From the IMG/VR virus record IMGVR_UViG_3300017971_000190, positions 1 to 64,000 of that record: a stretch of 64,000 nt of DNA. One strand, given 5' to 3'. The notes beneath the pieces are model-generated. The model was not told where the DNA came from. It ran no database searches and saw only the letters and a list, made by a program, of their open reading frames with translations. Position numbers and translations under genes: made by a program. Positions within the stretch are counted from its first letter, which is position 1, and each line of letters starts with the position of its first letter. Below, piece after piece: positions 1 to 47,073 of the stretch.

Positions 1-212
1 ACAACTGAAATGTAATTGATGTTTGCCTTTGATATGGCTGAGGCCTACGTTGAGTAGGAGAGTTCTACCGGTGGGGTCGGGTACCGGGTAGACAACTGAA
101 ATGTAATTGATGTTTGCCTTTGATATGGCTGAGGCCTACGTTGAGTAGGAGAGTTCTACCGGTGGGGTCGGGTACCGGGTAGACAACTGAAATGTAATCG
201 ATGTTTGCCTTT
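1..212 (+). repeat. 91-bp tandem repeat, 2 full copies plus a 30-bp partial copy
   Basis: 1-91 equals 92-182; 183-212 repeats the first 30 nt with one mismatch; the unit contains hairpins cctac/gtagg and tctacc..ggtaga. Confidence 0.9.
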
Positions 213-213
213 C

Positions 214-333
214 GTGGGTTTACACAGACTGTGGCTCGCAGAATCTGGGGAAGTAATTGGCGGTGAAGGAAGAAAATGAGCTTGGGGCATCTGGTGAAAC
301 ATCCAGACCGACTTTAACTGCCCGCCAACCCAC
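214..333 (+). ncRNA. Unidentified ~120-nt structured RNA, copy 1 (family A)
   Basis: Closed by gtggg/cccac; shares cagactgtggctcgcagaatctg and other blocks with 1307-1426; compensatory helix ttggcgg/ccgccaa. Confidence 0.75.
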
Positions 334-341
334 ATAATTTT

Positions 342-432
342 TGAGGGGCTGATGACGGTCAGAGATTGCGACTTTAAACCACAAGTCGCTAGAATTAATA
401 ACTGTGGGTTCGAGTCCCACCCCCTCGTTCCA
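342..432 (+). tRNA. Aberrant tRNA-like RNA (10-nt anticodon-position loop containing CTTTAAA)
   Basis: Acceptor tgagggg/cccctcg, T-arm gtggg-TTCGAGT-cccac, encoded CCA; helix gcgact/agtcgc has a 10-nt loop. Confidence 0.5.
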
Positions 433-716
433 GCAAGTTCCTAGAACATCTAAGAAGCTGTGATTGTATTGGGTCAGTGGCCTGTGCAGTACACAGTGGA
501 GACGGTTCGTTTAAGGAACGAGCTGCCTTTAGTCGAGATCCCGCGTTGGCGACTAGAGGGTTGGCAGTACCAATGCAGGGGTGCGAGGTGGGTAAGTCGG
601 TCTGGTAGATTTTACCTGTTTGTAATCCAGCGACACCACTTCAATAAATGGGACTAACAGGTCTCAACCATCTTTCGTTGTCACAAGTCGGTTGAGTATT
701 CACAAGATGACAACTA

Positions 717-781
717 GGAGTGAGGACACTAGCTTGAGTGCTTCAACGGTTTCGGCTCAAGTCCATAGCCCTTCTCCGAAA
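717..781 (+). ncRNA. Stem-loop/pseudoknot element (cttgag..ctcaag family)
   Basis: Stem 733-738/756-761; loop tttcgg complementary to downstream ccgaaa 776-781. Confidence 0.4.
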
Positions 782-966
782 AATTGATTGAAAACCGTTT
801 ACGCCTACACGGAGTTGGGGGTTCTACAGTTGTAGGAAGAGCTTAAAAACCCAAAGTAACAGGTGGGGCTACCGGGATGTATCTTTCCCTTTCAGTGTAA
901 GCCTGTTGCGGTAGGGAGAGTGGTGGACACGCTTGCCCCAACCCTCTACCCGAATTTTTCGTTTTT

Positions 967-1233
967 GGTAAATGGAAGGTTGGCCTAAAAGCAGCCATCC
1001 TTTAAAGAGTGAGGCGAAGACCTGTTGCTCGGATTTTTGCTGTGAGAGGCTTGGGTACGGTTAATCTCACAGGTTCCACGCGAGTCAAAAACGTAAAGTC
1101 GCTTTTTACGTAAATAGATTTGGGAGTGGCTCTCCCTAGCGTGCTGAAACAGGAGTACTTTCGGTTAAGTGAGGAGGCACCCCGGAGACGGTAAGGCCGA
1201 ATCCCTCTTTGGCGTAGCAGCACACCATTTACC
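967..1233 (+). ncRNA. 23S rRNA GTPase-associated centre (H43-H44, L11-binding domain) mimic with a 201-nt insertion
   Basis: 975-1010 + 1212-1225 align without gaps to E. coli 23S 1055-1104 (GAAGGTTGGCCTAAAAGCAGCCATCCTTTAAAGAGT|GCGTAGCAGCACAC); closed by a 9-bp stem ggtaaatgg/ccatttacc. Confidence 0.85.
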
Positions 1234-1306
1234 TTTTTCAGCCCCGTACCAAGTGTCCTATGGAGTTCGGGTTTAAATACTCCTCTTGGTACGCATTTTC
1301 AACCTT

Positions 1307-1426
1307 GTGGGTGTACTCAGACTGTGGCTCGCAGAATCTGAGGCAGTAATTGGTAAGAGATGAAGCTAATGAGCTTGACACCTGTAAAATAAGTTGCAGG
1401 GTGACTAAAACTGCTTACCAGCCCAC
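1307..1426 (+). ncRNA. Unidentified ~120-nt structured RNA, copy 2 (family A)
   Basis: Paralog of 214-333; helix changed to tggtaag/cttacca; closed by gtggg/cccac and followed by a T-run. Confidence 0.75.
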
Positions 1427-1514
1427 ATTTTTTGAGTTGCCCCCTAAGCACTGGTCTAACGATCCTGCTTAGGTGATCGGGGAGTGGATGGTACCTGAAG
1501 CTCCCCACTTTTTT

Positions 1515-1601
1515 GGAAGATGAACGGGAAGGCCGGGCATTAGTGCACAGTGTCGTACCGGTTCGACTCCGGTTTGGAAATCCAAGTTCTTGGCATCTTC
1601 C
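1515..1601 (+). ncRNA. tRNA-like RNA with T-arm but rearranged architecture
   Basis: 8-bp closing stem ggaagatg/catcttcc; T-arm accgg-TTCGACT-ccggt followed by an extra hairpin ttgga/tccaa before the 3' strand. Confidence 0.5.
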
Positions 1602-1708
1602 TTGAAAAACCGCCAGAGGAATTACACGTTATAATCTGGCCTCTACAGAGAGTAAAAAATGTGAGGTTGTGAGTGCTTTTCCAAAAACTCTCACCCGACA
1701 TAAGTTGG

Positions 1709-1804
1709 ATTTAGTGTCTTGTGCAGTCATAGATGGGAGGCGTTGAACTCTGGTCACCAGGTTGGAGGGAGCCAACAGTGAAATACCATCCATTGGCATT
1801 AAAT
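1709..1804 (+). ncRNA. 23S rRNA L1 stalk (H76-H78) mimic
   Basis: TGTGCAGTCATAGATGGGAGGCGTTGAA...GGAGCCAACAGTGAAATACCATCC matches 23S ~2109-2179 (UGUGUAGGAUAGGUGGGAGGCUUUGAA...GGAGCCGACCUUGAAAUACCACCC); 10-bp H76-like stem atttagtgtc/ggcattaaat. Confidence 0.85.
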
Positions 1805-1982
1805 TGTATAAATACAACAATTTGTGTTGGGTAATTTTCAGTTGCAACCCCTGGGTTCTGAGGTATTTGCCGGTAGCCTGCAGAACAGGGAAGTCCCGTA
1901 GCCGGATGGGTTTGGTAGTAGAACCTCTGACCCTTTTAATTGAGTCAGTAGCTGTACACTAAGAAAAAACTACCACTTTTTC

Positions 1983-2050
1983 GGAGCCTGTAATTTAAAT
2001 GGAAAAAGAAGCGTTAGCCTATTTCTAGGCTCGAATCCTAGCAGGTTCCT
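1983..2050 (+). tRNA. Degenerate tRNA-like RNA (8-bp acceptor, CTCGAAT T-loop)
   Basis: ggagcctg/caggttcc plus ctagg-CTCGAAT-cctag; D and anticodon arms weak. Confidence 0.4.
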
Positions 2051-2192
2051 TAAAGGGTGTAGTCTCCCTCCTGGGGAAACATTTCCTGGGTTATTTGGCC
2101 ATAAAAGACTACAACGCAAATCGAAAGTGCTTGTTGAATTGATTTGTGTAATCCGAACAAGCAGTTGTGAGTGCTTCTATAAACTCTCATTT

Positions 2193-2296
2193 GTGAGGTT
2201 CCTGGTTGTCCAAGGATGTAAACAGGTGAGTGCTTGGGTGTGTATTCTCGCTCAAGACTGGGCAGGCGAATTGACGCTAGCGAAGCTTGGCCTCAC
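2193..2296 (+). ncRNA. Closed structured RNA
   Basis: gtgagg/cctcac closing stem, internal cttggg/ctcaag stem, followed by a T-run. Confidence 0.4.
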
Positions 2297-2304
2297 ATTT
2301 TTAA

Positions 2305-2414
2305 TCCCTATGATAGAGGATCTACTGATCATTCTAGAACGGTCGGTTGGCAGAAAAAGCTTGTTGGACCCAACTTGTTTTTCTGTTGTCCTGGTTCGAT
2401 CCCAGGATGGGGAA
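2305..2414 (+). tRNA. Aberrant tRNA-like RNA with a very long variable arm and TTCTAGAA loop
   Basis: Acceptor tccctat/atgggga; D-arm taga-gga-tcta; 6-bp stem ctgatc/ggtcgg with a 10-nt loop; variable arm cagaaaaa/tttttctg; T-arm cctgg-TTCGATC-ccagg. Confidence 0.55.
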
Positions 2415-2451
2415 CTAAAGCACTTGGTTGTGAGTGATTCCTAAAACTCTC

Positions 2452-2575
2452 GGTTGTTGGTATACCAGGGTACTAACAATCTTAACACCTGGAAAAGCGT
2501 TTTGGTAGTTATCGTCAATAAATTGCTCTACTTGAGTGACGCCGGGCTCTCCTCAAGTGGTAAAACCCGGCAACC
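2452..2575 (+). ncRNA. Structured RNA with H-type pseudoknot
   Basis: ggttg/caacc ends; stem cttgag 2531/ctcaag 2552; loop gccggg 2541 pairs with cccggc 2566. Confidence 0.55.
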
Positions 2576-2587
2576 TTTTTATTTTTC

Positions 2588-2616
2588 TTGACTTCCTTCT
2601 TTTAGCACAGCATAAT
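2588..2616 (+). promoter_or_regulatory. Sigma70-like promoter
   Basis: TTGACT-17-CATAAT upstream of the ORF at 2649. Confidence 0.55.
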
Positions 2617-2648
2617 AATTGGTGTTAAACAGCTAAAAGGAGTCACAA

Positions 2649-3140
2649 ATGGTGCAGCAACACAAAATCCGAGAAGGCGTCCCCTACACCGATGGTAAAT
2701 CCATCAGAGTTATTGTTGATACTGAAGCTGGGAGTTTTGAGAACGGCACACCCGTGTATTATAGAACCACCCGAGACCTTTTCAAGGAAGTACACGAATG
2801 CTCTTTGGGAGCGTTTGCTCGGTGGGCAACACTGCAACACGAAGAGCTGTCAGATCAAATCGTACTGGCTATTCGCCCAAATAACGGAGCAGATGTTCTC
2901 CCAGACAATCTAGAAACCAGGGTGACAAGGATTTTGAAGACCGAGATTCTGAAAATTGAAGCCGGTTTGGGAACCGTTTCTTTTAATAAAAACGTAATTC
3001 CAGCCAAACTGCTGAGACAGTTGATTCAGGATTACGAAACACTCTACGGCTCAGAAACGCTTAATATCGAAGTAGTTTTCAGTCTTTTCCTTGACGGTGC
3101 GGTGGACCGCACGGAATTCCGGTTTAAGTCTGAACAATAA
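2649..3140 (+). CDS. Hypothetical protein (163 aa)
   Basis: ORF with SD aaaaggag. Confidence 0.75.
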   Translation: MVQQHKIREGVPYTDGKSIRVIVDTEAGSFENGTPVYYRTTRDLFKEVHECSLGAFARWATLQHEELSDQIVLAIRPNNGADVLPDNLETRVTRILKTEILKIEAGLGTVSFNKNVIPAKLLRQLIQDYETLYGSETLNIEVVFSLFLDGAVDRTEFRFKSEQ

Positions 3141-3230
3141 AGGGAGTTCGAGCTAGCGCTTCTTCCTGAGGGGCTTTGGTCCTGAAAATTCTAGCACACA
3201 CACGCTTTTATCAAGAAAGGAGATAGGATT

Positions 3231-3266
3231 ATGAAGCGCATTCCTGTTAACCTAATCAACCTCTAA
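3231..3266 (+). CDS. Putative 11-aa mini-peptide MKRIPVNLINL
   Basis: Strong SD aaaggag upstream of ATG. Confidence 0.3.
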   Translation: MKRIPVNLINL

Positions 3267-3297
3267 CCCTCCCACTTAAAGCTGAGTTAGCACTCAG

Positions 3298-3368
3298 GTC
3301 CGGTTGGTGGACGTACCAGAGGAAGTATTCTGTGTTCGTTGGTACCGACACAGGGTATTAAACCGGAC
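3298..3368 (+). ncRNA. Closed structured RNA
   Basis: gtccggtt/aaccggac stem; internal tattctgtgt/acacagggta helix. Confidence 0.45.
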
Positions 3369-3372
3369 ATCT

Positions 3373-3444
3373 GGCCCCATCGTTCAATGGTTAGGACACA
3401 GGATTTTCATTCCTGAGATCGGGTTTCGACTACCCGTGGGGTCA
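3373..3444 (+). tRNA. tRNA-Glu(TTC)
   Basis: Cloverleaf; anticodon arm cagga-ttTTCat-tcctg; T-stem has T53-A61. Confidence 0.9.
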
Positions 3445-3474
3445 ATAAACTATTAAAAGAAAGGTCATACTACA

Positions 3475-3663
3475 ATGGTGGAAAAGGAAAACAGTTTCTA
3501 CAAAGAACAATTTTCTATTTTGCAAAGGCGTCTTCGTGGTTCCATAGAAGAAGCAAAGAAGGAAGGAGACACGAAGAGAGAGATTGCTCTTCTGAGGGTA
3601 GGTTGTGACGTTGCGAACATTTTGAAGGGTGTGAACATAAATTACAACCCTCCTGGTTACTAA
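3475..3663 (+). CDS. Hypothetical protein (62 aa)
   Basis: ORF with SD aaagg between tRNAs. Confidence 0.6.
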   Translation: MVEKENSFYKEQFSILQRRLRGSIEEAKKEGDTKREIALLRVGCDVANILKGVNINYNPPGY

Positions 3664-3670
3664 AAGTTTA

Positions 3671-3743
3671 GGGCTCGTCGTCTAATTGGTAAGGCTCCAA
3701 GCTCATAACTTGGTCATTCGGGTTTCGATCACCCGCGAGCCCA
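3671..3743 (+). tRNA. tRNA with CAT anticodon (Met or Ile2)
   Basis: Cloverleaf; ccaag-ctCATaa-cttgg; G1-C72 paired, so not an initiator; T53-A61. Confidence 0.88.
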
Positions 3744-3826
3744 CTATGTTACTGACTACCTGAGACCGCAGCTCAAAGGTTAGTAGCAGAACACCTCAAT
3801 TAAGTGACGGTAGAACACTGAGGTGT

Positions 3827-3988
3827 GTGCAAGCAGGTACTACCGGGAAACTATTTTCTACCCTGTAACCACGTAGTTCCGAGGAGCACAAAAGAATGAT
3901 CCACCTTTTGTCCCTACCTGGAACTTAGCGTAGTTTCCCGCGTCTTTGGCGAAAGCCGTACTGCGTTGAGGATCAAACCTGCTTGCAC
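3827..3988 (+). ncRNA. ~160-nt multi-helix structured RNA
   Basis: 12-bp closing stem gtgcaagcaggt/acctgcttgcac; nested cgggaaacta/tagtttcccg, agttcc/ggaact, acaaaag/cttttgt, ggc-GAAA-gcc. Confidence 0.65.
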
Positions 3989-4000
3989 TTTTTCTTTTTT

Positions 4001-4082
4001 GCCCACATGGTGGAACAGGTAGACACGCGAATTTTAGGTGTTCGTGGCTAACGCCGTGGGAGTTCGAGTCTCTCTGTGGGCA
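4001..4082 (+). tRNA. tRNA-Leu(TAG)
   Basis: Class II cloverleaf; cgaat-ttTAGgt-gttcg; variable arm; A73. Confidence 0.92.
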
Positions 4083-4217
4083 CTAGGTCATTCTAATTTT
4101 AAGTCCTGGTAATGGTGCTAGGCAAACGTGACAAGCTTTCCATCCTTCACGTTCGAGAAAAGTTAGAATGACCTTAAATTTGTTGGGAGTTTGAGCTAAA
4201 CAAAAGAGGTACTTAAA

Positions 4218-4550
4218 ATGATTTTCACCTATGAGATAAAACGTCACAGTGTGGATTTCCTTTTCGAGGACGGCAGCTTTCATTCAATAGTGGTGGGACA
4301 AGGGCCTGGTTACTGGTACCGAATCATTTCAAAATTGAGAGAGTTGGGAAAAGAGATAAATCCGGAAGACTTTGACCAGGGTATAGAACGTCTATACTAC
4401 GATTACGCCACCGAGGAACTGAGAGGAAAAACAGAAAAGCAGAAAGAATTGGGATACTTTACCTGTCCCCAGTGCAACGTGATTTATCCTTGTCGTTCTT
4501 TCAAATATCAAAATCCTTGCGACAACTGTCGTTATGTAAAAATTACCTAG
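4218..4550 (+). CDS. Hypothetical protein, C-terminal CxxC..CxxC Zn ribbon
   Basis: ORF with SD gaggt. Confidence 0.7.
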   Translation: MIFTYEIKRHSVDFLFEDGSFHSIVVGQGPGYWYRIISKLRELGKEINPEDFDQGIERLYYDYATEELRGKTEKQKELGYFTCPQCNVIYPCRSFKYQNPCDNCRYVKIT

Positions 4551-4639
4551 TCACTTCGTGGTTAGGAGTGGGGCAATGGAATTGAGAAACCCCCTAGAGG
4601 TTATTGGGCAAAAAAGAAAGCAGGAAAGATAGATTAATA

Positions 4640-4700
4640 GTTCACATGGTAGTTTAGGTACCAGCGGGAAACCGTGTAGGTTCGAGTCCTACTGTGGGCA
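4640..4700 (+). tRNA. D-armless 61-nt derivative of tRNA-Leu(TAG)
   Basis: Acceptor gttcaca/tgtgggc, TTTAGGT retained, variable hairpin gcgg/ccgt, T-arm gtagg-TTCGAGT-cctac; the 3' end matches that of 4001-4082. Confidence 0.65.
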
Positions 4701-4703
4701 CTA

Positions 4704-4874
4704 GTTGGTAGTTCTGGGAGACCTTGGTGAAACACTCCATGGGAACCCACGGTAAAAACGAGACGTGGTAGGTTGTGTAGGTAACTACAGAGCCCTTCTA
4801 TCTAGTTACTCCTTGAGGGTAACGGGGGTAGTCGGATCTTGTTTTTAGAAACAAGGCCCACCTGAACTACCAAC
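4704..4874 (+). ncRNA. ~170-nt structured RNA
   Basis: 11-bp closing stem gttggtagttc/gaactaccaac with several internal hairpins. Confidence 0.6.
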
Positions 4875-5059
4875 AACTTCTTCCTAAGCACTTCGTGTTT
4901 GGGAGTGGGGCACTGGCATTTTAAAGTCCAACTCCATGTGGTTAGGGCAAACCAGTTCAAGACTTGGGCCTTTTGGCTAGCCCAGATGTATTTCTGATTG
5001 CCGACAAGTTACAGGCTGGTTGATACCAATTACCACGAAAGAAAGAGCTAGCCACTATG

Positions 5060-5144
5060 GGAAGGATGACCGAGCGGCTGAAGGTACACGCCTGCTAAGC
5101 GTGCGTAGGGAAACCTACCGAGGGTTCGAATCCCTCTCCTTCCG
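5060..5144 (+). tRNA. tRNA-Ser(GCT)
   Basis: Class II cloverleaf; cacgc-ctGCTaa-gcgtg; G73. Confidence 0.95.
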
Positions 5145-5248
5145 ACGCAGTTGGCCCCGCTGCACATCCTATCGAGAATAATTACCACAGATGTGTGTAC
5201 ACAAAGATGCTAGGATCTTTATTTGTGGTGGTTATTCTAGGGGCAATT

Positions 5249-5378
5249 GGCAGAGTGGCGAAACGAAAAGAGGCCCATACTAGTTAACCTCTTTCTTTGG
5301 TAAACGCGCGGTAACTCCGTGATTGGTCAATCAGTTAACTGGTTCACTATCTTCCAGGTTCAAATCCTGGCTCTGTCA
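5249..5378 (+). tRNA. tRNA-like RNA with a hairpin inserted in the D-loop and a degenerate anticodon arm
   Basis: ggcagag/ctctgtc; Leu/Ser-type D-arm tggcgaaac..tggtaaacgc split by aaagagg/cctcttt; T-arm ccagg-TTCAAAT-cctgg. Confidence 0.55.
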
Positions 5379-5461
5379 AGATGCTATCGCATACACTGCC
5401 TTCAAAAAGTGTATTGACAAATTAAAAAATGTTGTCACAAGACTACTAGGAGGTATTAATC

Positions 5462-5632
5462 ATGGAAAGACTTATTTATCGCTTTATTCCTAACGTTGAG
5501 ACCTTAATTGAGCAATACGAGTTGGAAGGTTTCGAGGTGCGGGGATACAGTGAGTACAGTTCTGACGGGATTCCTAGGGTGGCTGAGATGGTCAAGTGGG
5601 TTTCTGATAAACCGTCTCAAGAAAAGGAATGA
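5462..5632 (+). CDS. Hypothetical protein (56 aa; below the ORF-track cutoff)
   Basis: SD aggaggt, ATG..TGA open frame. Confidence 0.65.
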   Translation: MERLIYRFIPNVETLIEQYELEGFEVRGYSEYSSDGIPRVAEMVKWVSDKPSQEKE

Positions 5633-5657
5633 TTTTTGATTTTCTTCTCTTTCTTTT

Positions 5658-5732
5658 CGGGGAATAACTCAGTCTGGTAGAGTGCCTGCTTTGGGAGCAG
5701 GAAGTTCGCAGGTTCGAATCCTGTTTCCCCGA
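5658..5732 (+). tRNA. tRNA-Pro(TGG)
   Basis: Cloverleaf; C1-G72; cctgc-ttTGGga-gcagg. Confidence 0.95.
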
Positions 5733-5798
5733 TTAAGTTTATTTTTCAAAGTACACGAAAAATAAACTACCTCACTGGTACAGAGGTTAAAGTACTGT

Positions 5799-5959
5799 GG
5801 ACAAGTGTTGTGCAGAGGGTAGCACAGAGAGTAAGCTAACGAAAAGCGAAACCTGCCGTGCGAGAAGAGCAGGTCCACGGTGTAATCGGAATGCCTCTAG
5901 TGTGGTGCACCACAGCTAGTTTTAATGCCAATGAGAGGTTCGATTCCTCTCCTTGTCCA
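5799..5959 (+). ncRNA. tRNA-like termini enclosing a ~125-nt pseudoknotted insert
   Basis: ggacaag/cttgtcc plus T-arm gagagg-TTCGATT-cctctc; acctgc/gcaggt stem whose loop ccgtg pairs with cacgg. Confidence 0.55.
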
Positions 5960-5981
5960 AATGTTGGGTTGGTACTTTACC

Positions 5982-6180
5982 AACGACAACAGCTTTCTTC
6001 GGGAGCCCGGAAGAAAGGCTTAACCAGCGCCAGTGAGCTTCAATGGGTCGTGCACACACCGCGTTGAAGATGACTCTGGGGTAGTAGGAAGGTGCACAGA
6101 ACGGCAAACTAGGCTTTTCCTAGGTTGGCTTCTAGGCACCGATCCCTCCTTCAGTGGTGTGTGGGGCTTGGTTGTTCGTT
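5982..6180 (+). ncRNA. ~200-nt structured RNA with GTGCAC loop
   Basis: acgacaac/gttgttcgt ends; agctttcttc/gaagaaaggct hairpin; cttcaa/ttgaag stem; gtgcac at 6050 and 6092. Confidence 0.5.
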
Positions 6181-6219
6181 CACACAGGGCTCAATTTTAA
6201 AAATTATTAAAGGTGAAAA

Positions 6220-6417
6220 ATGAAGCTAACTAAAAAACAAGAAAAATTGGTAAAAGAGGTTATTGGAGACGGCACCGATTTTCCAAAATTTACAAACGAC
6301 CCTTATGTTAATCACAGAGTAGACATGCTTGTTTGTGACTGTCCACCTTGGGAGGAGTTGAGTAAGGAAGAGCAAGATTTGTATTTTGAGGAAGTAGAAG
6401 CTTCTAAAATGGAATAA
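6220..6417 (+). CDS. Hypothetical protein (65 aa)
   Basis: ORF with SD aaggtg. Confidence 0.65.
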   Translation: MKLTKKQEKLVKEVIGDGTDFPKFTNDPYVNHRVDMLVCDCPPWEELSKEEQDLYFEEVEASKME

Positions 6418-6438
6418 TTATTAATAGTATTGTTTCTT

Positions 6439-6510
6439 TGAGGCGTAGGCAAACGGTAAGCCACGAATTTTTGGTGTTCGGCATTGGAGGTTCGAATCCT
6501 CCCGCCTCAA
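6439..6510 (+). tRNA. tRNA-Gln(TTG)
   Basis: Cloverleaf; T1-A72; cgaat-ttTTGgt-gttcg. Confidence 0.88.
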
Positions 6511-6512
6511 AA

Positions 6513-6662
6513 ATGAAAAAAGAAAAACCTTTGAAGGATTTACTGCCGAATCCATGTTGTTGCAGTTTTCCCATGGAACCATTGAAAGTAACAAAACCAC
6601 TTAGAGAAAAATTGTGGAAGTGTCTCAAGTGTGGTAAGTTGATCTATAAATACAAAAACTAG
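6513..6662 (+). CDS. Small Cys-rich hypothetical protein (49 aa)
   Basis: ATG after tRNA-Gln; CC..CxxC. Confidence 0.45.
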   Translation: MKKEKPLKDLLPNPCCCSFPMEPLKVTKPLREKLWKCLKCGKLIYKYKN

Positions 6663-6665
6663 TGC

Positions 6666-6755
6666 GGAGTGTATAGTGTTTAAATGGCAACACGGCTAGT
6701 GGCTAACGGGTCATACCTGCCAGGCAAAAGTGGGTTCAAATCCTGCAACACTCCA
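6666..6755 (+). tRNA. Degenerate tRNA-like RNA
   Basis: ggagtgt/acactcc, D-arm gtgtt/aacac, TTCAAAT loop; anticodon arm poorly paired. Confidence 0.4.
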
Positions 6756-6824
6756 TATAATGTTTAGCGAGAGACAAGCAGTTGGGCTCTCGTGGCGACT
6801 TTGTAGAGGGTGTACAATTTTTCT

Positions 6825-6897
6825 GGGCGATTAACTCAGTTGGCAGAGTGCAATCTTTACGCGGTTGAAGTCACAGGTTCAAACCCTGTATCGCCCA
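6825..6897 (+). tRNA. tRNA-Val(TAC)
   Basis: Cloverleaf; caatc-ttTACgc-ggttg. Confidence 0.9.
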
Positions 6898-6905
6898 AAA
6901 AGAAG

Positions 6906-6934
6906 TTGACTTTACCACTACTCTGTGTTAGCCT
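6906..6934 (+). promoter_or_regulatory. Sigma70-like promoter
   Basis: TTGACT-17-TAGCCT with TG upstream of the -10. Confidence 0.45.
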
Positions 6935-7072
6935 TTTCTTAATCCGTGAGAGATCAGGCTCAACTGCTCTCACGGGGTTGTCAACGGGGTGGGCCAATCC
7001 CCTGACGGCGGGAGCTGCGTTTCCTTTTGGAAGCAGTCTCCCGTTTTAATTTTAGAAAGGAAACAAAGCACC

Positions 7073-7273
7073 ATGGTAGAAGAAAAAGAAACCTACGAAG
7101 CTATCAATTTTGGTTGGGACGGTGATGATTTTGTAACCGAAGATGTTACAGGCAAAATTCGTCGCTATCACGGTGCCAAAATTACCGACGTTAAGCGAGA
7201 GTGTTCTGTGGAAGTTCAAGACGGTAAAGTGATTGGACACTTTTCGTTTCAATTACCGAAAAAGAAAGGCTAA
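7073..7273 (+). CDS. Hypothetical protein
   Basis: SD aaagg; start re-assigned to ATG 7073. Confidence 0.65.
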   Translation: MVEEKETYEAINFGWDGDDFVTEDVTGKIRRYHGAKITDVKRECSVEVQDGKVIGHFSFQLPKKKG

Positions 7274-7277
7274 GAGA

Positions 7278-7565
7278 ATGACTATGGTAAAAGAACACGA
7301 ACTTAAGTATGGGGTAGATGGTTGCCTCTTAACCTGGCAAAACCCTTTTCCTGAAGAAGTAACCTGTGCTTGTTGTGGAAAAGAAGGTGCACGTTTAGCT
7401 TTTGTTCTACAAGAATCAGGCAAAAAGGAGCACGCTTGTAATTTATATCAAAACGATCCGGATGGAGAGGGATTTTGGGTGCACGATTCAGCTGCTTTTG
7501 CAGTTTATTTGTGCAGAGATATTAATTGCCCTGAAAAAGCTACCGCTAAGTGGAATCAAGCTTAA
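7278..7565 (+). CDS. Hypothetical Cys-containing protein
   Basis: ORF directly after the previous gene. Confidence 0.65.
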   Translation: MTMVKEHELKYGVDGCLLTWQNPFPEEVTCACCGKEGARLAFVLQESGKKEHACNLYQNDPDGEGFWVHDSAAFAVYLCRDINCPEKATAKWNQA

Positions 7566-7574
7566 AATATTTTT

Positions 7575-7647
7575 GGGTCCTTAGCTCAGCTGGTAGAGCA
7601 CCGGACTTTTAATCCGTAGGTCTTCGGTTCAAACCCGAAAGGACTCA
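7575..7647 (+). tRNA. tRNA-Lys(TTT)
   Basis: Cloverleaf; ccgga-ctTTTaa-tccgt. Confidence 0.92.
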
Positions 7648-7699
7648 TTAGTTCACCCATCAGAATAGTAAGTTTTAAGGAGAAAGATCATGAAGAAGA

Positions 7700-8377
7700 T
7701 TGTGCCTTCAAATTGTTGTAAACAGAATCAAGTATTTAAACTTAAACGAAAGAAGAACTGTTTTGAAAACATACCCAAGTATGGTTTATCCTCCCTTTGG
7801 AGGATTGAAGGAGTACCTTCACACCTTTGCTAAGTTGGACGGCAGCAATCTCAGATTTGAATGGAGCAAGAAAAAAGGTTGGTACAAAGTTGGAACCCGG
7901 CATCGTCTTGTAGACGAAAGTGATTCTATTTTTGGAAAAGCTCCCCTTATTTTTCAAGAAACTTTGGCTGACCAGTGCGAGAAAATTTGTAGAGATAATC
8001 GTTGGCAGAGAGCTGTGATTTTCTGCGAGTACTATGGACCACAAAGCTTTGCTGGCCTGCATGAAATTGGAGGTACGATGACGCTAACGGTTATAGACGT
8101 AGCTCCTTACAAAAAAGGCATTTTACCACCTACTGATTTTCTAAAACTGTTTGGAGAATTAGGGCCGCATTACCTGGGATACTTGAAGTGGAATTTTAAT
8201 TTCATAAATCGAGTTCATCAGGGTTTAGAGCCTGAAGCTAGTTTTGAAGGAGTAGTTGGTAAAGCTAAAGGGAAAGGAAATACACTACTTCTCTACAAAA
8301 CCAAAACTCAAGCCTGGAAAGATGAAGTTAAAAAACGATACAGTAAGAAGGAAGCAGAAAAAATAATTCATAGCTAA
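7700..8377 (+). CDS. ATP-dependent RNA ligase (Rnl2-like nucleotidyltransferase)
   Basis: Motifs KLDGSN (I), FCEYYG (III), FEGVV (IV), YKTK (V). Confidence 0.75.
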   Translation: MCLQIVVNRIKYLNLNERRTVLKTYPSMVYPPFGGLKEYLHTFAKLDGSNLRFEWSKKKGWYKVGTRHRLVDESDSIFGKAPLIFQETLADQCEKICRDNRWQRAVIFCEYYGPQSFAGLHEIGGTMTLTVIDVAPYKKGILPPTDFLKLFGELGPHYLGYLKWNFNFINRVHQGLEPEASFEGVVGKAKGKGNTLLLYKTKTQAWKDEVKKRYSKKEAEKIIHS

Positions 8378-46689: not shown

Positions 46690-47073
46690 ATGAGCCGCTG
46701 TTGTTGTGGACGAGGGAGACCTTCCCGTGTGGCAGGTGGCCCCCCAGTTTGTAAAGCTCTAGAAGAGAGTGGAAGTTCCTTTTTGGTGTGGCCTATACGT
46801 ACTGGTTCAGGCTTACACTTGGCTGTGAAATTACCCGTTGGAAAACAAATCAAACAGGTGGATCTTTTTTCATTTTTGACCAGTGTAAATTGCAATGGTC
46901 CTACAGCAACTTGGTTGAAAAGAGAAATTTCTTTTATTCAAAATGCTGTGCAGAAAAAAGAAGAATTGTTTTATGGGTACACGTCATCAGGAATATCCGT
47001 CAATAAATTAGTGCAAATCTCTAGGAGAGCTACACGTGACCAAGAAAAATTACCAACTAACTCCTCTCGGTAA
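46690..47073 (+). CDS. Hypothetical protein
   Basis: 127-aa ORF. Confidence 0.55.
   Translation: MSRCCCGRGRPSRVAGGPPVCKALEESGSSFLVWPIRTGSGLHLAVKLPVGKQIKQVDLFSFLTSVNCNGPTATWLKREISFIQNAVQKKEELFYGYTSSGISVNKLVQISRRATRDQEKLPTNSSR

What the first reader, a model, noticed from the sequence alone, without database searches (positions are those of the whole stretch)
967..1804. Phage RNA cluster carries stand-alone mimics of both mobile 50S stalks (L11/GAC and L1 domains)
Seen: two isolated 23S rRNA domains, about 480 nt apart, each excised at its domain boundary and closed by its own helix. They sit among tRNAs and tRNA-like RNAs, with no other recognisable 23S scaffold around them. Known: these two domains fold autonomously and bind uL11 and uL1. 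uL1 autorepresses the rplK-rplA operon through an rRNA-like leader, and uL11 is required for RelA activation. Inference: the phage expresses decoy rRNA modules that could titrate uL11/uL1, derepress ribosomal protein synthesis, blunt the stringent response, or absorb ribosome-targeting defence nucleases or thiopeptides. I do not know of a described phage system like this.
Basis: partly seen in the sequence, partly recalled or inferred. Interest (0 to 1): 0.93.

Follow-up and report, generated by a model that had tools for sequence, protein, structure and literature searches.

The report
Phage RNAs mimic two ribosomal stalks
A large uncultivated phage encodes two small stand-alone RNAs that copy the two mobile stalks of the large ribosomal subunit; the L11-stalk copy belongs to a widespread, apparently undescribed RNA family found mainly in phage tRNA gene clusters, whose function is untested but is most likely that of a molecular decoy.

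Summary
Window 969-1231 and 1710-1803 are two helix-closed RNAs matching 23S rRNA H42-44 (GTPase-associated centre, GAC) and H76-78 (L1 stalk); nothing else in the 64 kb is rRNA-like. The GAC-like RNA is not a singleton. About 40 copies exist in cultured phages (Pseudomonas pf16, Astolliot, Milchi, UNO-G1W1; Aeromonas 4_4572; Xanthomonas XacN1), in IMG/VR contigs and on one Aromatoleum plasmid. Its helices covary strongly. It keeps 36 of the 39 GAC positions that are at least 95% conserved in real 23S, and carries a family-specific domain inserted at the H44 bulge. A covariance model built only from phage copies finds the true GAC in 17 of 17 real 23S genes. Most copies lie in tRNA clusters on the tRNA strand, often 8-28 nt from a tRNA. 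The L1-like RNA is rare: four to five stand-alone copies, one of them on a bacterial chromosome. Only this phage has both RNAs. Neither matches any Rfam family above threshold, and no description was found in the searchable literature. Function is untested. The best reading is trans-acting decoys that display stalk surfaces to uL11/uL1 and to stalk-directed factors.

The parts
969..1231 (+). GAC-like RNA, whole unit (H42-H43-[insert]-H44 mimic)
   Evidence: Covariance model R1, built from 20 other phage copies, scores window 963-1237 at 141.4 bits, E=1e-37. Outer pair coordinates come from alignment A2.
969..975 (+). 5' strand of the H42-like closing helix (pairs with 1225-1231)
   Evidence: Six of 7 pairs show compensatory changes across 36 sequences; 90.9% of cells are paired. 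The helix is also predicted by single-sequence folding.
977..1001 (+). H43-like hairpin (rRNA 1057-1081, including the A1067 loop)
   Evidence: 90% identical to E. coli 1059-1088. Positions 1059, 1060, 1062-1064, 1066, 1071, 1073-1075 and 1077 are invariant in the family. The 1058-1080 pair switches G-C to A-U 12 times, as it does in rRNA.
1001..1010 (+). Junction UUUAAAGAGU (rRNA 1081-1090), including invariant A1088
   Evidence: A1085 and A1088 are 100% conserved; 1081, 1083, 1084, 1087 and 1089 are at least 94% conserved.
1011..1207 (+). Family-specific inserted domain, closed by a 4-bp helix (1011-1014 with 1204-1207)
   Evidence: All 4 closing pairs covary (for example A-U 19 times against G-C 17 times at the second pair). 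The domain ranges from roughly 50 to 290 nt among members and has no similarity to 23S or 16S.
1176..1198 (+). Conserved inner hairpin GGCA-CCCCG-GAGA-CGG-UAA-GG-CC
   Evidence: Conserved in about three quarters of members. The loop-closing pair occurs as G-C 12 times, G-U 13 times and A-U 7 times.
1211..1223 (+). H44-like hairpin GGCGUAGCAGCAC (rRNA 1090-1102, including the A1095 loop)
   Evidence: Collinear with rRNA 1090-1105. G1091, G1093, U1094, A1098 and C1100 are invariant; C1092 and G1099 are 97% and A1095 is 94% conserved. Model R1 aligns real H44 to these positions in 17 of 17 real 23S genes.
1225..1231 (+). 3' strand of the H42-like closing helix
1710..1803 (+). L1-stalk-like RNA, whole unit (H76-H77-H78 mimic)
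   Evidence: Rfam LSU_rRNA_bacteria positions 2124-2217, 41.9 bits, E=5e-12; blastn 52.7 bits. It keeps 21 of the 23 positions that are at least 95% conserved in 69 real L1 stalks.
1710..1718 (+). 5' strand of the H76-like closing helix UUUAGUGUC (pairs with GGCAUUAAA at 1795-1803)
   Evidence: Predicted in the MFE and centroid folds and matched to H76 by the Rfam model. The other stand-alone copies have unrelated closing helices at the same place.
1732..1790 (+). H77 (GAUGG 1732-1736 with CCAUC 1786-1790) enclosing GGGAGGC, H78 (1748-1767, loop CACCAG) and GGAGCC...UGAAAUACC
   Evidence: Ungapped alignment to E. coli 2117-2182. H77 covaries among copies: GAUGG/CCAUC here, GGCGG/CCGCC in L188, GGUGG/CCACC in E. 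coli.
3372..7648 (+). Canonical tRNA cluster (8 tRNAs) downstream on the same strand; genomic context of the RNA cluster
   Evidence: ARAGORN and Rfam.

Best explanation
Window 969-1231 and 1710-1803 are two separate small stable RNA genes of a large phage. Each folds like one autonomous, protein-binding domain of 23S rRNA: the GTPase-associated centre (H42-44, the uL11 site) and the L1 stalk (H76-78, the uL1 site).

Shown: both are real, helix-closed and rRNA-like well beyond chance. The GAC-like RNA belongs to a conserved, covarying family of mobile-element RNAs, found mostly in phage tRNA clusters and once on a plasmid. This family preserves the GAC's conserved nucleotides and adds one extra domain.

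Inferred, step 1: the RNAs are co-transcribed with tRNAs and tRNA-like RNAs and cut out by the tRNA-processing enzymes, so they accumulate as stable RNAs.

Inferred, step 2: they adopt the rRNA tertiary folds and are bound by free host uL11 and uL1, because no phage-encoded partner is linked to them.

Inferred, step 3, the committed mechanism: the resulting particles act in trans as decoys that display the stalk surfaces off the ribosome. They compete with ribosomal stalks for whatever targets those stalks. The most attractive candidates are host or competitor effectors directed at the GAC or L1 stalk. Alternative candidates are RelA or translation GTPases, or the r-proteins themselves.
For: Reality and rRNA likeness.

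Family: blastn and pattern scans found copies in 6 cultured phages and many IMG/VR contigs. There are 36 distinct sequences in alignment A2. Covariation is strong: 92.2% of cells are paired against 32-52% in slid controls, 16 pairs carry double changes, and 0 of 500 shuffles reached the observed values.

Mimicry: 36 of the 39 GAC positions that are at least 95% conserved in 41 distinct real 23S sequences have the same consensus base in the family, and 27 of them are at least 90% conserved there. These include U1060, A1088, G1071, C1072, G1091-C1100, C1092-G1099, A1067 (89%) and A1095 (94%). From my own knowledge of the L11-RNA crystal structures, these are the nucleotides that build the GAC tertiary fold and its factor-binding face.

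Reciprocal test: model R1, built from phage copies only, finds the true GAC end to end in 17 of 17 real 23S genes at 47-59 bits. It scores the held-out window copy at 141 bits.

Processing context: 222 tRNAs lie on the same strand and 0 on the opposite strand in 27 loci. In 12 loci a tRNA starts 8-28 nt downstream, and in 4 loci a tRNA ends 5-12 nt upstream.

Host partner: no neighbouring protein family is shared across 38 loci. No uL11 or uL1 homologue occurs in the window or in the GAC-family loci.

Presence on a plasmid (101.9 bits) fits a general mobile-element benefit such as counter-defence.

Precedent that the GAC is attacked: an antibacterial ADP-ribosyltransferase modifies H44 bases 1095-1098 (PMC8661411).

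L1-like RNA: the Rfam match, conserved T-loop and GGGAGGC/GGAGCC nucleotides, and independent closing helices in four copies.
Against: There is no expression, processing or binding evidence of any kind; everything beyond structure is inference.

The inserted domain sits at the H44 bulge next to A1088. It could change or block uL11 binding, and it implies a function that a plain decoy does not need.

No effector directed at the L1 stalk is known to me.

The L1-like RNA is rare, with 4-5 copies, and one is on a bacterial chromosome (L057). That fits a phage counter-defence role poorly.

The two RNAs co-occur only in this phage, so they need not share a function.

Thermodynamic z-scores of the single sequences are unremarkable (-0.65 to -1.55).
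Confidence: 0.45

Rival explanations
1. Ribosomal-protein sponges with a regulatory aim. The RNAs titrate free uL11 and uL1. Removing uL1 derepresses the rplK-rplA operon. Removing uL11 yields L11-poor ribosomes that cannot activate RelA, so the stringent response to infection is blunted.
For: The same structural evidence applies as for the main explanation. It is established knowledge that uL1 represses rplKA through an rRNA-like site and that uL11 is needed for RelA activation. No phage partner is linked to the RNAs.
Against: Only this phage has both RNAs, so a coordinated uL11/uL1 scheme cannot explain the family. uL11 already in ribosomes would not be removed by a sponge within one infection cycle (inference). 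A1067 and A1095 are not needed for uL11 C-terminal domain binding (own knowledge), yet they are kept at 89% and 94%. The plasmid copy has no obvious need to block the stringent response.
Confidence: 0.2
2. tRNA-elbow binders. Both ribosomal stalks touch the tRNA elbow. The L1 stalk's interdigitated T-loops hold E-site tRNA, and A1067 of the GAC contacts the elbow of incoming tRNA. The stand-alone RNAs would bind phage or host tRNAs, or tRNA-like RNAs, to chaperone, sort, sequester or shield them.
For: The L1 stalk, RNase P and T-box leaders use the same elbow-docking motif (PMC3664808 and PMC4810234). The T-loop nucleotides (UGUGUAG, AUAG, UGAAAUACC) are the best-conserved parts of all stand-alone L1-like copies. 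Both RNAs sit in tRNA or tRNA-like clusters.
Against: The A1067-elbow contact is recalled from ribosome structures and was not checked here. It is a single stacking contact that needs the ribosomal frame. It would not explain conservation of the whole GAC core. The plasmid copy has no canonical tRNA nearby.
Confidence: 0.12
3. Structural or processing modules of the tRNA precursor. A compact, nuclease-resistant fold, stabilised by abundant uL11 or uL1, is reused as a spacer or cap that protects or organises polycistronic tRNA transcripts. The mimicry would matter only for stability.
For: The RNAs abut tRNAs tightly and always lie on the same strand. T4 also keeps stable RNAs of unknown role in its tRNA operon.
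Against: Exposed loop bases that do not contribute to stability are conserved. The family persists where no tRNA is adjacent: 9 of 36 loci, and the plasmid. Most phage tRNA clusters lack it.
Confidence: 0.1
4. Not functional: assembly chimeras or decaying captured host rRNA fragments.
For: Host rRNA does contaminate 'viral' records (L008, L020). L019's L1-like piece is 94% identical to E. coli and lies at a contig end.
Against: The family is present in independently sequenced complete phage genomes, with compensatory changes in three helices. It has shared derived states (G1090 and A1101) plus a shared insert that are absent from all real 23S examined. The window's L1-like core matches the nearest of 77 real stalks at only 52-54 of 66 positions and has its own closing helix.
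Confidence: 0.03

Closest known systems
23S rRNA GTPase-associated centre (H42-H44, the 58-nt uL11 and thiostrepton-binding domain, E. coli 1051-1108)
   Same: The H43 and H44 hairpins, junction sequence and closing helix are the same. 36 of 39 highly conserved positions are identical in consensus. A model built from the phage RNAs recognises true GACs.
   Different: It is a separate gene outside any rRNA. It has a four-way junction, with a roughly 50-290 nt inserted domain at the 1089/1090 bulge. It has derived G1090 and A1101, and a closing helix of free sequence.
23S rRNA L1 stalk (H76-H78, the uL1 site and E-site tRNA elbow dock)
   Same: It is collinear and ungapped over 2117-2182. H77, H78 and both T-loop sequences are kept. 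It matches the Rfam LSU model over H76-78.
   Different: It is stand-alone, with a short unrelated helix in place of H76. H78 has four G-U pairs. U2177 is shared only with two other stand-alone copies.
Autoregulatory rRNA mimics in ribosomal-protein mRNAs (for example the uL1 site in the rplK-rplA leader and in archaeal L1 operon mRNAs)
   Same: Both are RNAs outside the ribosome that imitate an r-protein's rRNA site.
   Different: The leaders are minimal mimics acting in cis, located in the 5' UTR of r-protein operons. The present RNAs copy complete domains and lie among tRNAs, with no r-protein gene in the window or the GAC-family loci examined.
Phage T4 species 1 and 2 stable RNAs (rnaC, rnaD) in the tRNA operon
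   Same: Both are small stable RNAs embedded in a phage tRNA cluster on the tRNA strand, and their function is unknown.
   Different: There is no sequence or structural relationship. Model R1 scores at most 7.8 bits anywhere in the T4 locus, and rnaC and rnaD have no rRNA similarity.
Phage RNA-based mimicry for counter-defence (pseudo-ToxI antitoxin RNA, PMC3475682) and phage tRNAs that replace tRNAs attacked by host defences
   Same: Both involve a phage-encoded non-coding RNA that imitates a host or defence RNA in order to neutralise an attack. This is the logic proposed here.
   Different: Those imitate an antitoxin RNA or replace a tRNA. None imitates a ribosomal RNA domain, and the decoy role here is untested.

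Membership tests
23S rRNA GAC domain (H42-H44) | H43 hairpin with the conserved 1065-1073 loop and the 1057-1064/1074-1081 stem | tested here: met
   90% identity to E. coli 1059-1088. Per-position conservation matches real 23S. The stem pairs in 92.8% of cells.
23S rRNA GAC domain (H42-H44) | H44 hairpin (G1091-C1100, C1092-G1099, G1093.A1098, loop U1094-A1095-N-N) | tested here: met
   GGCGUAGCAGC at window 1211-1221. The pairs are kept in 100% of cells. Model R1 aligns real H44 there. Positions 1096 and 1097 are relaxed.
23S rRNA GAC domain (H42-H44) | Three-way junction of about 58 nt closed by H42 | tested here: not met
   It is closed by a covarying H42-like helix, but a fourth, covarying helix carrying a roughly 50-290 nt domain is inserted at 1089/1090.
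23S rRNA GAC domain (H42-H44) | Part of a 23S rRNA gene | tested here: not met
   No other 23S similarity occurs in the window or in any family locus.
23S rRNA GAC domain (H42-H44) | Binds uL11 and thiopeptides; adopts the GAC tertiary fold | not testable with these tools
   The only evidence is indirect: the nucleotides that make the tertiary contacts are conserved.
23S rRNA L1 stalk (H76-H78) | H76/H77/H78 three-way junction with the conserved GGGAGGC, GGAGCC and UGAAAUACC elements | tested here: met
   Rfam LSU_rRNA_bacteria positions 2124-2217 at 41.9 bits, E=5e-12. 21 of 23 conserved positions are kept.
23S rRNA L1 stalk (H76-H78) | Part of a 23S rRNA gene | tested here: not met
   By contrast, 119 of 120 metagenome loci sharing its 21-mer are complete or partial 23S genes, and the remaining one is the window's own contig.
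23S rRNA L1 stalk (H76-H78) | Binds uL1; docks the tRNA elbow | not testable with these tools
   Inference from conserved nucleotides only.
Ribosomal-protein autoregulatory leader (cis-acting rRNA mimic) | Located in the 5' UTR or intercistronic region of the regulated r-protein operon | tested here: not met
   No uL11 or uL1 homologue occurs in the window or the GAC-family loci (tblastn). The neighbours are tRNAs and unrelated small ORFs. L057 does lie near rplK, but downstream of it and separated from it by two unrelated genes.
Any curated RNA family (Rfam 15, including GOLLD, ROOL, tmRNA, RNase P and r-protein leaders) | Score at or above the family's gathering threshold | tested here: not met
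   Only tRNAs reach their thresholds. With permissive settings only sub-threshold LSU matches appear, plus a spurious c-di-GMP-II match.
T4 rnaC/rnaD-type stable RNAs | Sequence or structure similarity to T4 species 1 or 2 RNA | tested here: not met
New family proposed here: GAC-like mobile-element RNA | H42-like closing helix, H43-like hairpin, AAAGAGU junction, helix-closed insert and GGCGUARNAGCACAC hairpin, scoring with model R1 | tested here: met
   The window copy scores 141.4 bits although it was left out of the model.

The most novel reading that the evidence does not exclude
Mobile genetic elements encode trans-acting copies of exposed ribosomal RNA domains as decoys that shield the host ribosome's stalks, or the proteins on them, during takeover. 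This would be a new layer of the phage-host conflict fought at the GTPase-associated centre and the L1 stalk. It would imply that host defence or competitor effectors aimed at these stalks are common and mostly undiscovered.
Probability: 0.3. Interest if true: 0.95.

Novelty: new variant of a known kind. Interest (0 to 1): 0.85.

Why it matters
RNA mimicry of rRNA is known only as short cis-acting sites in ribosomal-protein mRNAs. Here complete, autonomously folding rRNA domains exist as separate genes on phages and on one plasmid. At least one of them forms a conserved family that has gone unannotated in well-studied cultured phages such as pf16 and XacN1.

This gives a concrete, testable handle on three questions: what the non-tRNA RNAs in phage tRNA clusters do, whether the ribosomal stalks are a battleground between hosts and mobile elements, and how much of the GAC fold tolerates insertion. 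It also supplies an annotation, in the form of a covariance model, for a recurrent unannotated gap in phage genomes.

Tried and rejected
1. Rfam at gathering and permissive thresholds on the whole region gave no LSU hit. Only when the short stretches were searched alone did sub-threshold LSU matches appear. For the GAC-like RNA, the Rfam alignment places H44's 3' strand inside the insert (1065-1070). I rejected that placement in favour of 1211-1223, which the family covariation supports.

2. The pattern CCCGGAGACGGTAAGGC also hit GC-rich coding repeats (L010, L016, L018). These were rejected as chance matches.

3. The apparent 'signature' GGAGCCAACAGTGAAATACCA of the L1-like RNA is not phage-specific. 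119 of 120 metagenome hits are genuine 23S genes.

4. L058, L059 and L061 (genome scan) and most hits of the loose 3'-half pattern are chance matches in coding DNA.

5. Synteny search with ORF 2649-3140 found no relatives.

6. Searching for the contig-start repeat, to recover the rest of the RNA cluster, found nothing.

7. Promoter and terminator scans were not above shuffled expectation.

8. A conserved protein partner was sought among 432 neighbouring ORFs; none was found.

9. Phage-encoded uL11 or uL1: the hits in the phage collection are host-DNA contamination or other large phages, and none is a carrier of the GAC-like RNA.

10. Relatedness to T4 rnaC/rnaD was rejected.

11. The weak c-di-GMP-II and tRNA-Sec Rfam hits are explained by the L1-like element and by a suppressor-type tRNA respectively.

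12. Eight literature searches found no description of these RNAs. Only open-access papers and bioRxiv were covered, so this is not proof of novelty.
Full report
WHAT THE WINDOW IS. The window is the first 64 kb of IMG/VR contig IMGVR_UViG_3300017971_000190 (221,679 bp); locus L015 is identical to it. It is a large, very divergent phage. It encodes a family-A DNA polymerase fused to a UDG-like domain, both topoisomerase II subunits and an RNA ligase-like ORF. Positions 1-2600 hold no convincing ORF and are followed by eight canonical tRNAs at 3372-7648, all on the + strand.

CHECKING THE OBSERVATION. Rfam at gathering score, and at E<=10 over 1-3400, reports no rRNA. A direct comparison with E. 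coli 23S shows otherwise. Window 1729-1794 aligns without gaps to 2117-2182 (66 nt, 77%, 52.7 bits), and window 979-1008 aligns to 1059-1088 (90%, 41.9 bits). The best of 100 shuffles scored 30.1 bits. Nothing else in the 64 kb resembles 23S or 16S. When only the short stretches are searched, so that Infernal's filters relax, LSU_rRNA_bacteria matches 1709-1804 over model positions 2124-2217 (H76-H78) at 41.9 bits, E=5e-12. The H43/H44 region of an LSU model matches 975-1070 weakly, at 16.4 bits.

THE GAC-LIKE RNA IS A FAMILY. blastn of the region against cultured phages gave unexpected two-piece matches of window 972-1228 in unannotated DNA. The phages were Pseudomonas phages Astolliot, UNO-G1W1, pf16 and Milchi, Aeromonas phage 4_4572 and Xanthomonas jumbo phage XacN1. 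Pattern scans of IMG/VR added many contigs, most of them 90-400 kb long. After removal of chance hits in coding repeats and duplicates, 36 distinct copies were aligned (A2).

The alignment shows two invariant blocks. The 5' block is GGNAGGUUGGCUUAGAAGCAGCCAUCCUUUAAAGAGUG, equivalent to rRNA 1055-1091. The 3' block is CUUUGGCGUARNAGCACAC, and its GGCGUA..AGCACAC part is collinear with rRNA 1090-1104. Between the blocks lies a variable domain. Units run from about 126 to 366 nt including the closing helix.

A four-helix model was tested on the MAFFT alignment. The model has an H42-like closing helix, H43, a helix closing the insert, and H44. 92.2% of cells pair, against 32-52% when the partners are slid. 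16 pairs carry changes on both sides, 6 of the 7 closing-helix pairs and all 4 insert-helix pairs are compensatory, and none of 500 shuffles reached the observed values. Single-sequence folding of the window copy recovers the same layout.

HOW GOOD IS THE MIMICRY? A metagenome scan meant for the L1-like RNA returned 119 genuine 23S genes, which I used as a yardstick. Of the 39 GAC positions that are at least 95% conserved in 41 distinct real sequences, the phage family has the same consensus base at 36, and 27 of these are at least 90% conserved. The conservation profiles correlate (Spearman 0.59, p=1e-6).

The three exceptions are 1052, 1107 and 1101. The first two lie in the closing helix, which covaries freely, and 1101 is at the insertion junction. 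The retained positions include U1060, A1088, G1071, C1072, G1091-C1100, C1092-G1099, A1073, A1077, A1085 and G1055-C1104. From my own knowledge of the L11-RNA crystal structures, these build the GAC tertiary fold. The exposed A1067 (89%) and A1095 (94%) are also retained. G1090 and A1101 are shared derived states of the family and are absent from all real sequences. Together with the shared insert, this argues for one origin rather than repeated capture.

The reciprocal test is the strongest. Covariance model R1 was built from 20 phage copies without the window. It scores the window copy at 141.4 bits (E=1e-37) and recovers all held-out members. It adds L029, L034, L036 and a second copy in L032. 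It also finds the true GAC end to end, with the insert deleted, in 17 of 17 real 23S genes at 47-59 bits, and nothing else in those genes.

CONTEXT OF THE FAMILY. In 27 of 36 cases the locus holds tRNAs. All 222 of those tRNAs are on the strand of the element and none is on the other strand. In 12 loci a tRNA starts 8-28 nt after the closing helix, and in 4 loci a tRNA ends 5-12 nt before it. This layout fits co-transcription with tRNAs and release by RNase P/Z-type processing, but that is an inference.

No protein family is shared among 432 same-strand neighbouring ORFs of 38 loci, apart from close relatives of one phage. No uL11 or uL1 homologue is encoded in the window or in the family loci. 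A bona fide member (101.9 bits, E=2e-28) lies in a 1.5-kb unannotated gap of plasmid 1 of Aromatoleum aromaticum EbN1, near traT. It has no canonical tRNA nearby but has T-arm-like motifs downstream. It is the only plasmid copy found among 72,556 plasmids with this query. T4's rnaC and rnaD occupy the same kind of position but are unrelated.

THE L1-LIKE RNA. The unit is 1710-1803. A 9-bp helix (UUUAGUGUC with GGCAUUAAA) stands where H76 would be. It encloses H77 (GAUGG/CCAUC), GGGAGGC, a 7-bp H78 with loop CACCAG, GGAGCC and UGAAAUACC.

The RNA has no relative in cultured phages by blastn, and none of the other GAC-family loci fetched by then has such a piece. Scans found four further stand-alone copies, meaning L1-like segments with no other 23S similarity in the locus:
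- L188, on a 28.5-kb viral contig, with H77 fully compensated to GGCGG/CCGCC.
- L060, on a 60-kb contig binned as Gracilibacteria whose genes hit phage-only PHROGs. It has a roughly 60-nt insertion in H78.
- L019, at the end of a 42.8-kb viral contig and 94% identical to E. coli, so a chimera is possible.
- L057.

L057 turned out to be a bacterial chromosome fragment. It carries secE, nusG and rplK, then dCTP deaminase and a peptidoglycan-binding protein, then a terminator, a TATACT box, the L1-like RNA and tRNA-Trp. No rplA follows rplK. Stand-alone L1-stalk RNAs are therefore not confined to phages.

All copies become rRNA-like at about 2110 and stop at about 2182. Each has its own unrelated closing helix, which is predicted independently by folding. 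They keep 21-23 of the 23 positions that are at least 95% conserved in 69 real stalks, counted outside the anchor used to collect those stalks. The window's core matches the nearest of 77 real stalks at only 52-54 of 66 positions, so it is not a fresh copy of host rRNA. The window, L057 and L060 share U2177 (CCAUCC). None of the five hits to the 19-mer containing it, in a scan of one genome for each of about 185,000 species, lay in a real 23S gene.

WHAT IT MOST LIKELY DOES. Shown: there are two autonomous structured RNAs that imitate complete rRNA domains. One of them is under long-term purifying selection for the GAC's own conserved nucleotides.

Inferred:
1. They are expressed with the tRNAs and processed to stable RNAs.
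2. They fold like the rRNA domains and are bound by free host uL11 and uL1. No phage partner is linked, and those proteins bind the isolated rRNA domains tightly (established knowledge).
3. They act as decoys in trans.

I favour a decoy for stalk-directed attackers or factors for four reasons. The exposed A1067 and A1095 loops are conserved as well as the protein-binding core. The family also rides on a plasmid. Phage tRNA clusters are already known as counter-measures against attacks on the translation apparatus. The GAC's H44 loop (1095-1098) is a documented target of an antibacterial ADP-ribosyltransferase (PMC8661411).

The rivals are the following:
- tRNA-elbow binders. The L1 stalk shares its elbow-docking T-loop motif with RNase P and T-box leaders (PMC3664808 and PMC4810234). 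The A1067-elbow contact is from my own knowledge.
- Mere structural modules of the tRNA precursor.
- Artefacts, which are largely excluded.

None of these can be separated without experiments. The family-specific inserted domain, with its conserved GGCA-CCCCG-NNNN-YGG-UAA-GG-C hairpin, is unexplained by any of them. It warns that the RNA does something a plain GAC copy does not.

NOVELTY AND VERDICT. No Rfam 15 family covers either RNA. Six full-text searches for a description found none; two further searches only sourced background facts. The library covers open-access papers and bioRxiv only. The principle of RNA mimicry of rRNA is known from r-protein mRNA leaders. Complete rRNA domains as separate, conserved genes of mobile elements are not. 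I therefore rate this a new variant of a known kind, with a substantial chance that it marks a new mechanism.

The structural interpretation is supported and extended. The functional proposals remain open.

Noticed in passing
window 342-428: A suppressor-type tRNA with anticodon UUA, which would read the UAA stop codon. ARAGORN finds it only at relaxed threshold, and Rfam scores it as a weak tRNA-Sec-like hit (23 bits). Amber-suppressor tRNAs (anticodon CUA, called tRNA-Pyl) occur in five other GAC-family loci (L023, L024, L026, L040, L047). This hints that many carrier phages may recode stop codons.
   Followed up: partly
window 1-212: A 91-nt unit repeated 2.3 times in tandem at the very start of the contig. 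It is not found anywhere else in IMG/VR, so the upstream continuation of the RNA cluster could not be recovered.
   Followed up: yes
window 214-340 and 1307-1432: Two copies (82% identical over 71 nt) of an unknown helix-closed RNA of about 125 nt (GUGGGU...ACCCAC). They have no Rfam match and no relative in any other fetched locus.
   Followed up: partly
window 1666-1696, 2164-2194, 2427-2457: A hairpin, GTTGTGAGTGCTT...AAACTCTC, repeated three times, each copy just upstream of an RNA module; the first lies 14 nt before the L1-like RNA. It may be a processing or promoter signal.
   Followed up: no
window 1510-1584; also T-arm-like motifs at 407, 1560, 2028 and 2393: Degenerate tRNA-like units with good T-arms but non-canonical remaining parts are scattered through the RNA cluster.
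   Followed up: partly
window 7700-8377; L007 (XacN1) 1831-2481: An RNA ligase-like ORF directly follows the window's tRNA cluster. In XacN1, a 2'-5' RNA ligase gene ends a few nucleotides before its GAC-like RNA. The RNAs may therefore sit in an RNA-repair context.
   Followed up: no
L057 (JAYVII010000037.1) 159-249, minus strand: A bacterial chromosome fragment (secE-nusG-rplK, with no rplA following) carries a stand-alone L1-stalk-like RNA gene. The gene has its own -10-like box and lies just upstream of tRNA-Trp. It could be an L1-related regulatory RNA, or a trans-supplied stalk in a bacterium lacking the usual rplA arrangement.
   Followed up: partly
L060 (JAIPIK010000005.1) 2213-2349, minus strand: An L1-like RNA with a roughly 60-nt insertion in the H78 arm, on a 60-kb contig binned as Candidatus Gracilibacteria. 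The contig's genes hit phage-only PHROG families, so it is probably a phage or prophage.
   Followed up: partly
L203 (NC_006823.1, Aromatoleum aromaticum EbN1 plasmid 1) 3275-3565 and about 4024-4085: A GAC-like RNA family member sits in a 1.5-kb unannotated gap near traT on an F-type plasmid. T-arm-like motifs follow it, but there is no canonical tRNA.
   Followed up: partly
L026 3842-4090 and 4095-4340; L032 4032-4347 and 6148-6390: Two phage contigs each carry two copies of the GAC-like RNA. The copies are adjacent in L026 and about 1.8 kb apart in L032.
   Followed up: no
L008 (MZ092003.1, Paenibacillus phage Pd_22F) 1273-4180; L020 (IMGVR_UViG_2775507074_000001): Records filed as phage or viral contain complete or near-complete genuine 23S rRNA genes. 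This is probably host DNA or misassembly, and it is a caution for rRNA-like hits in viral collections.
   Followed up: partly
window 47036-50071: A single 1011-aa ORF combines a uracil-DNA-glycosylase-superfamily domain, a 3'-5' exonuclease and a family-A DNA polymerase.
   Followed up: no
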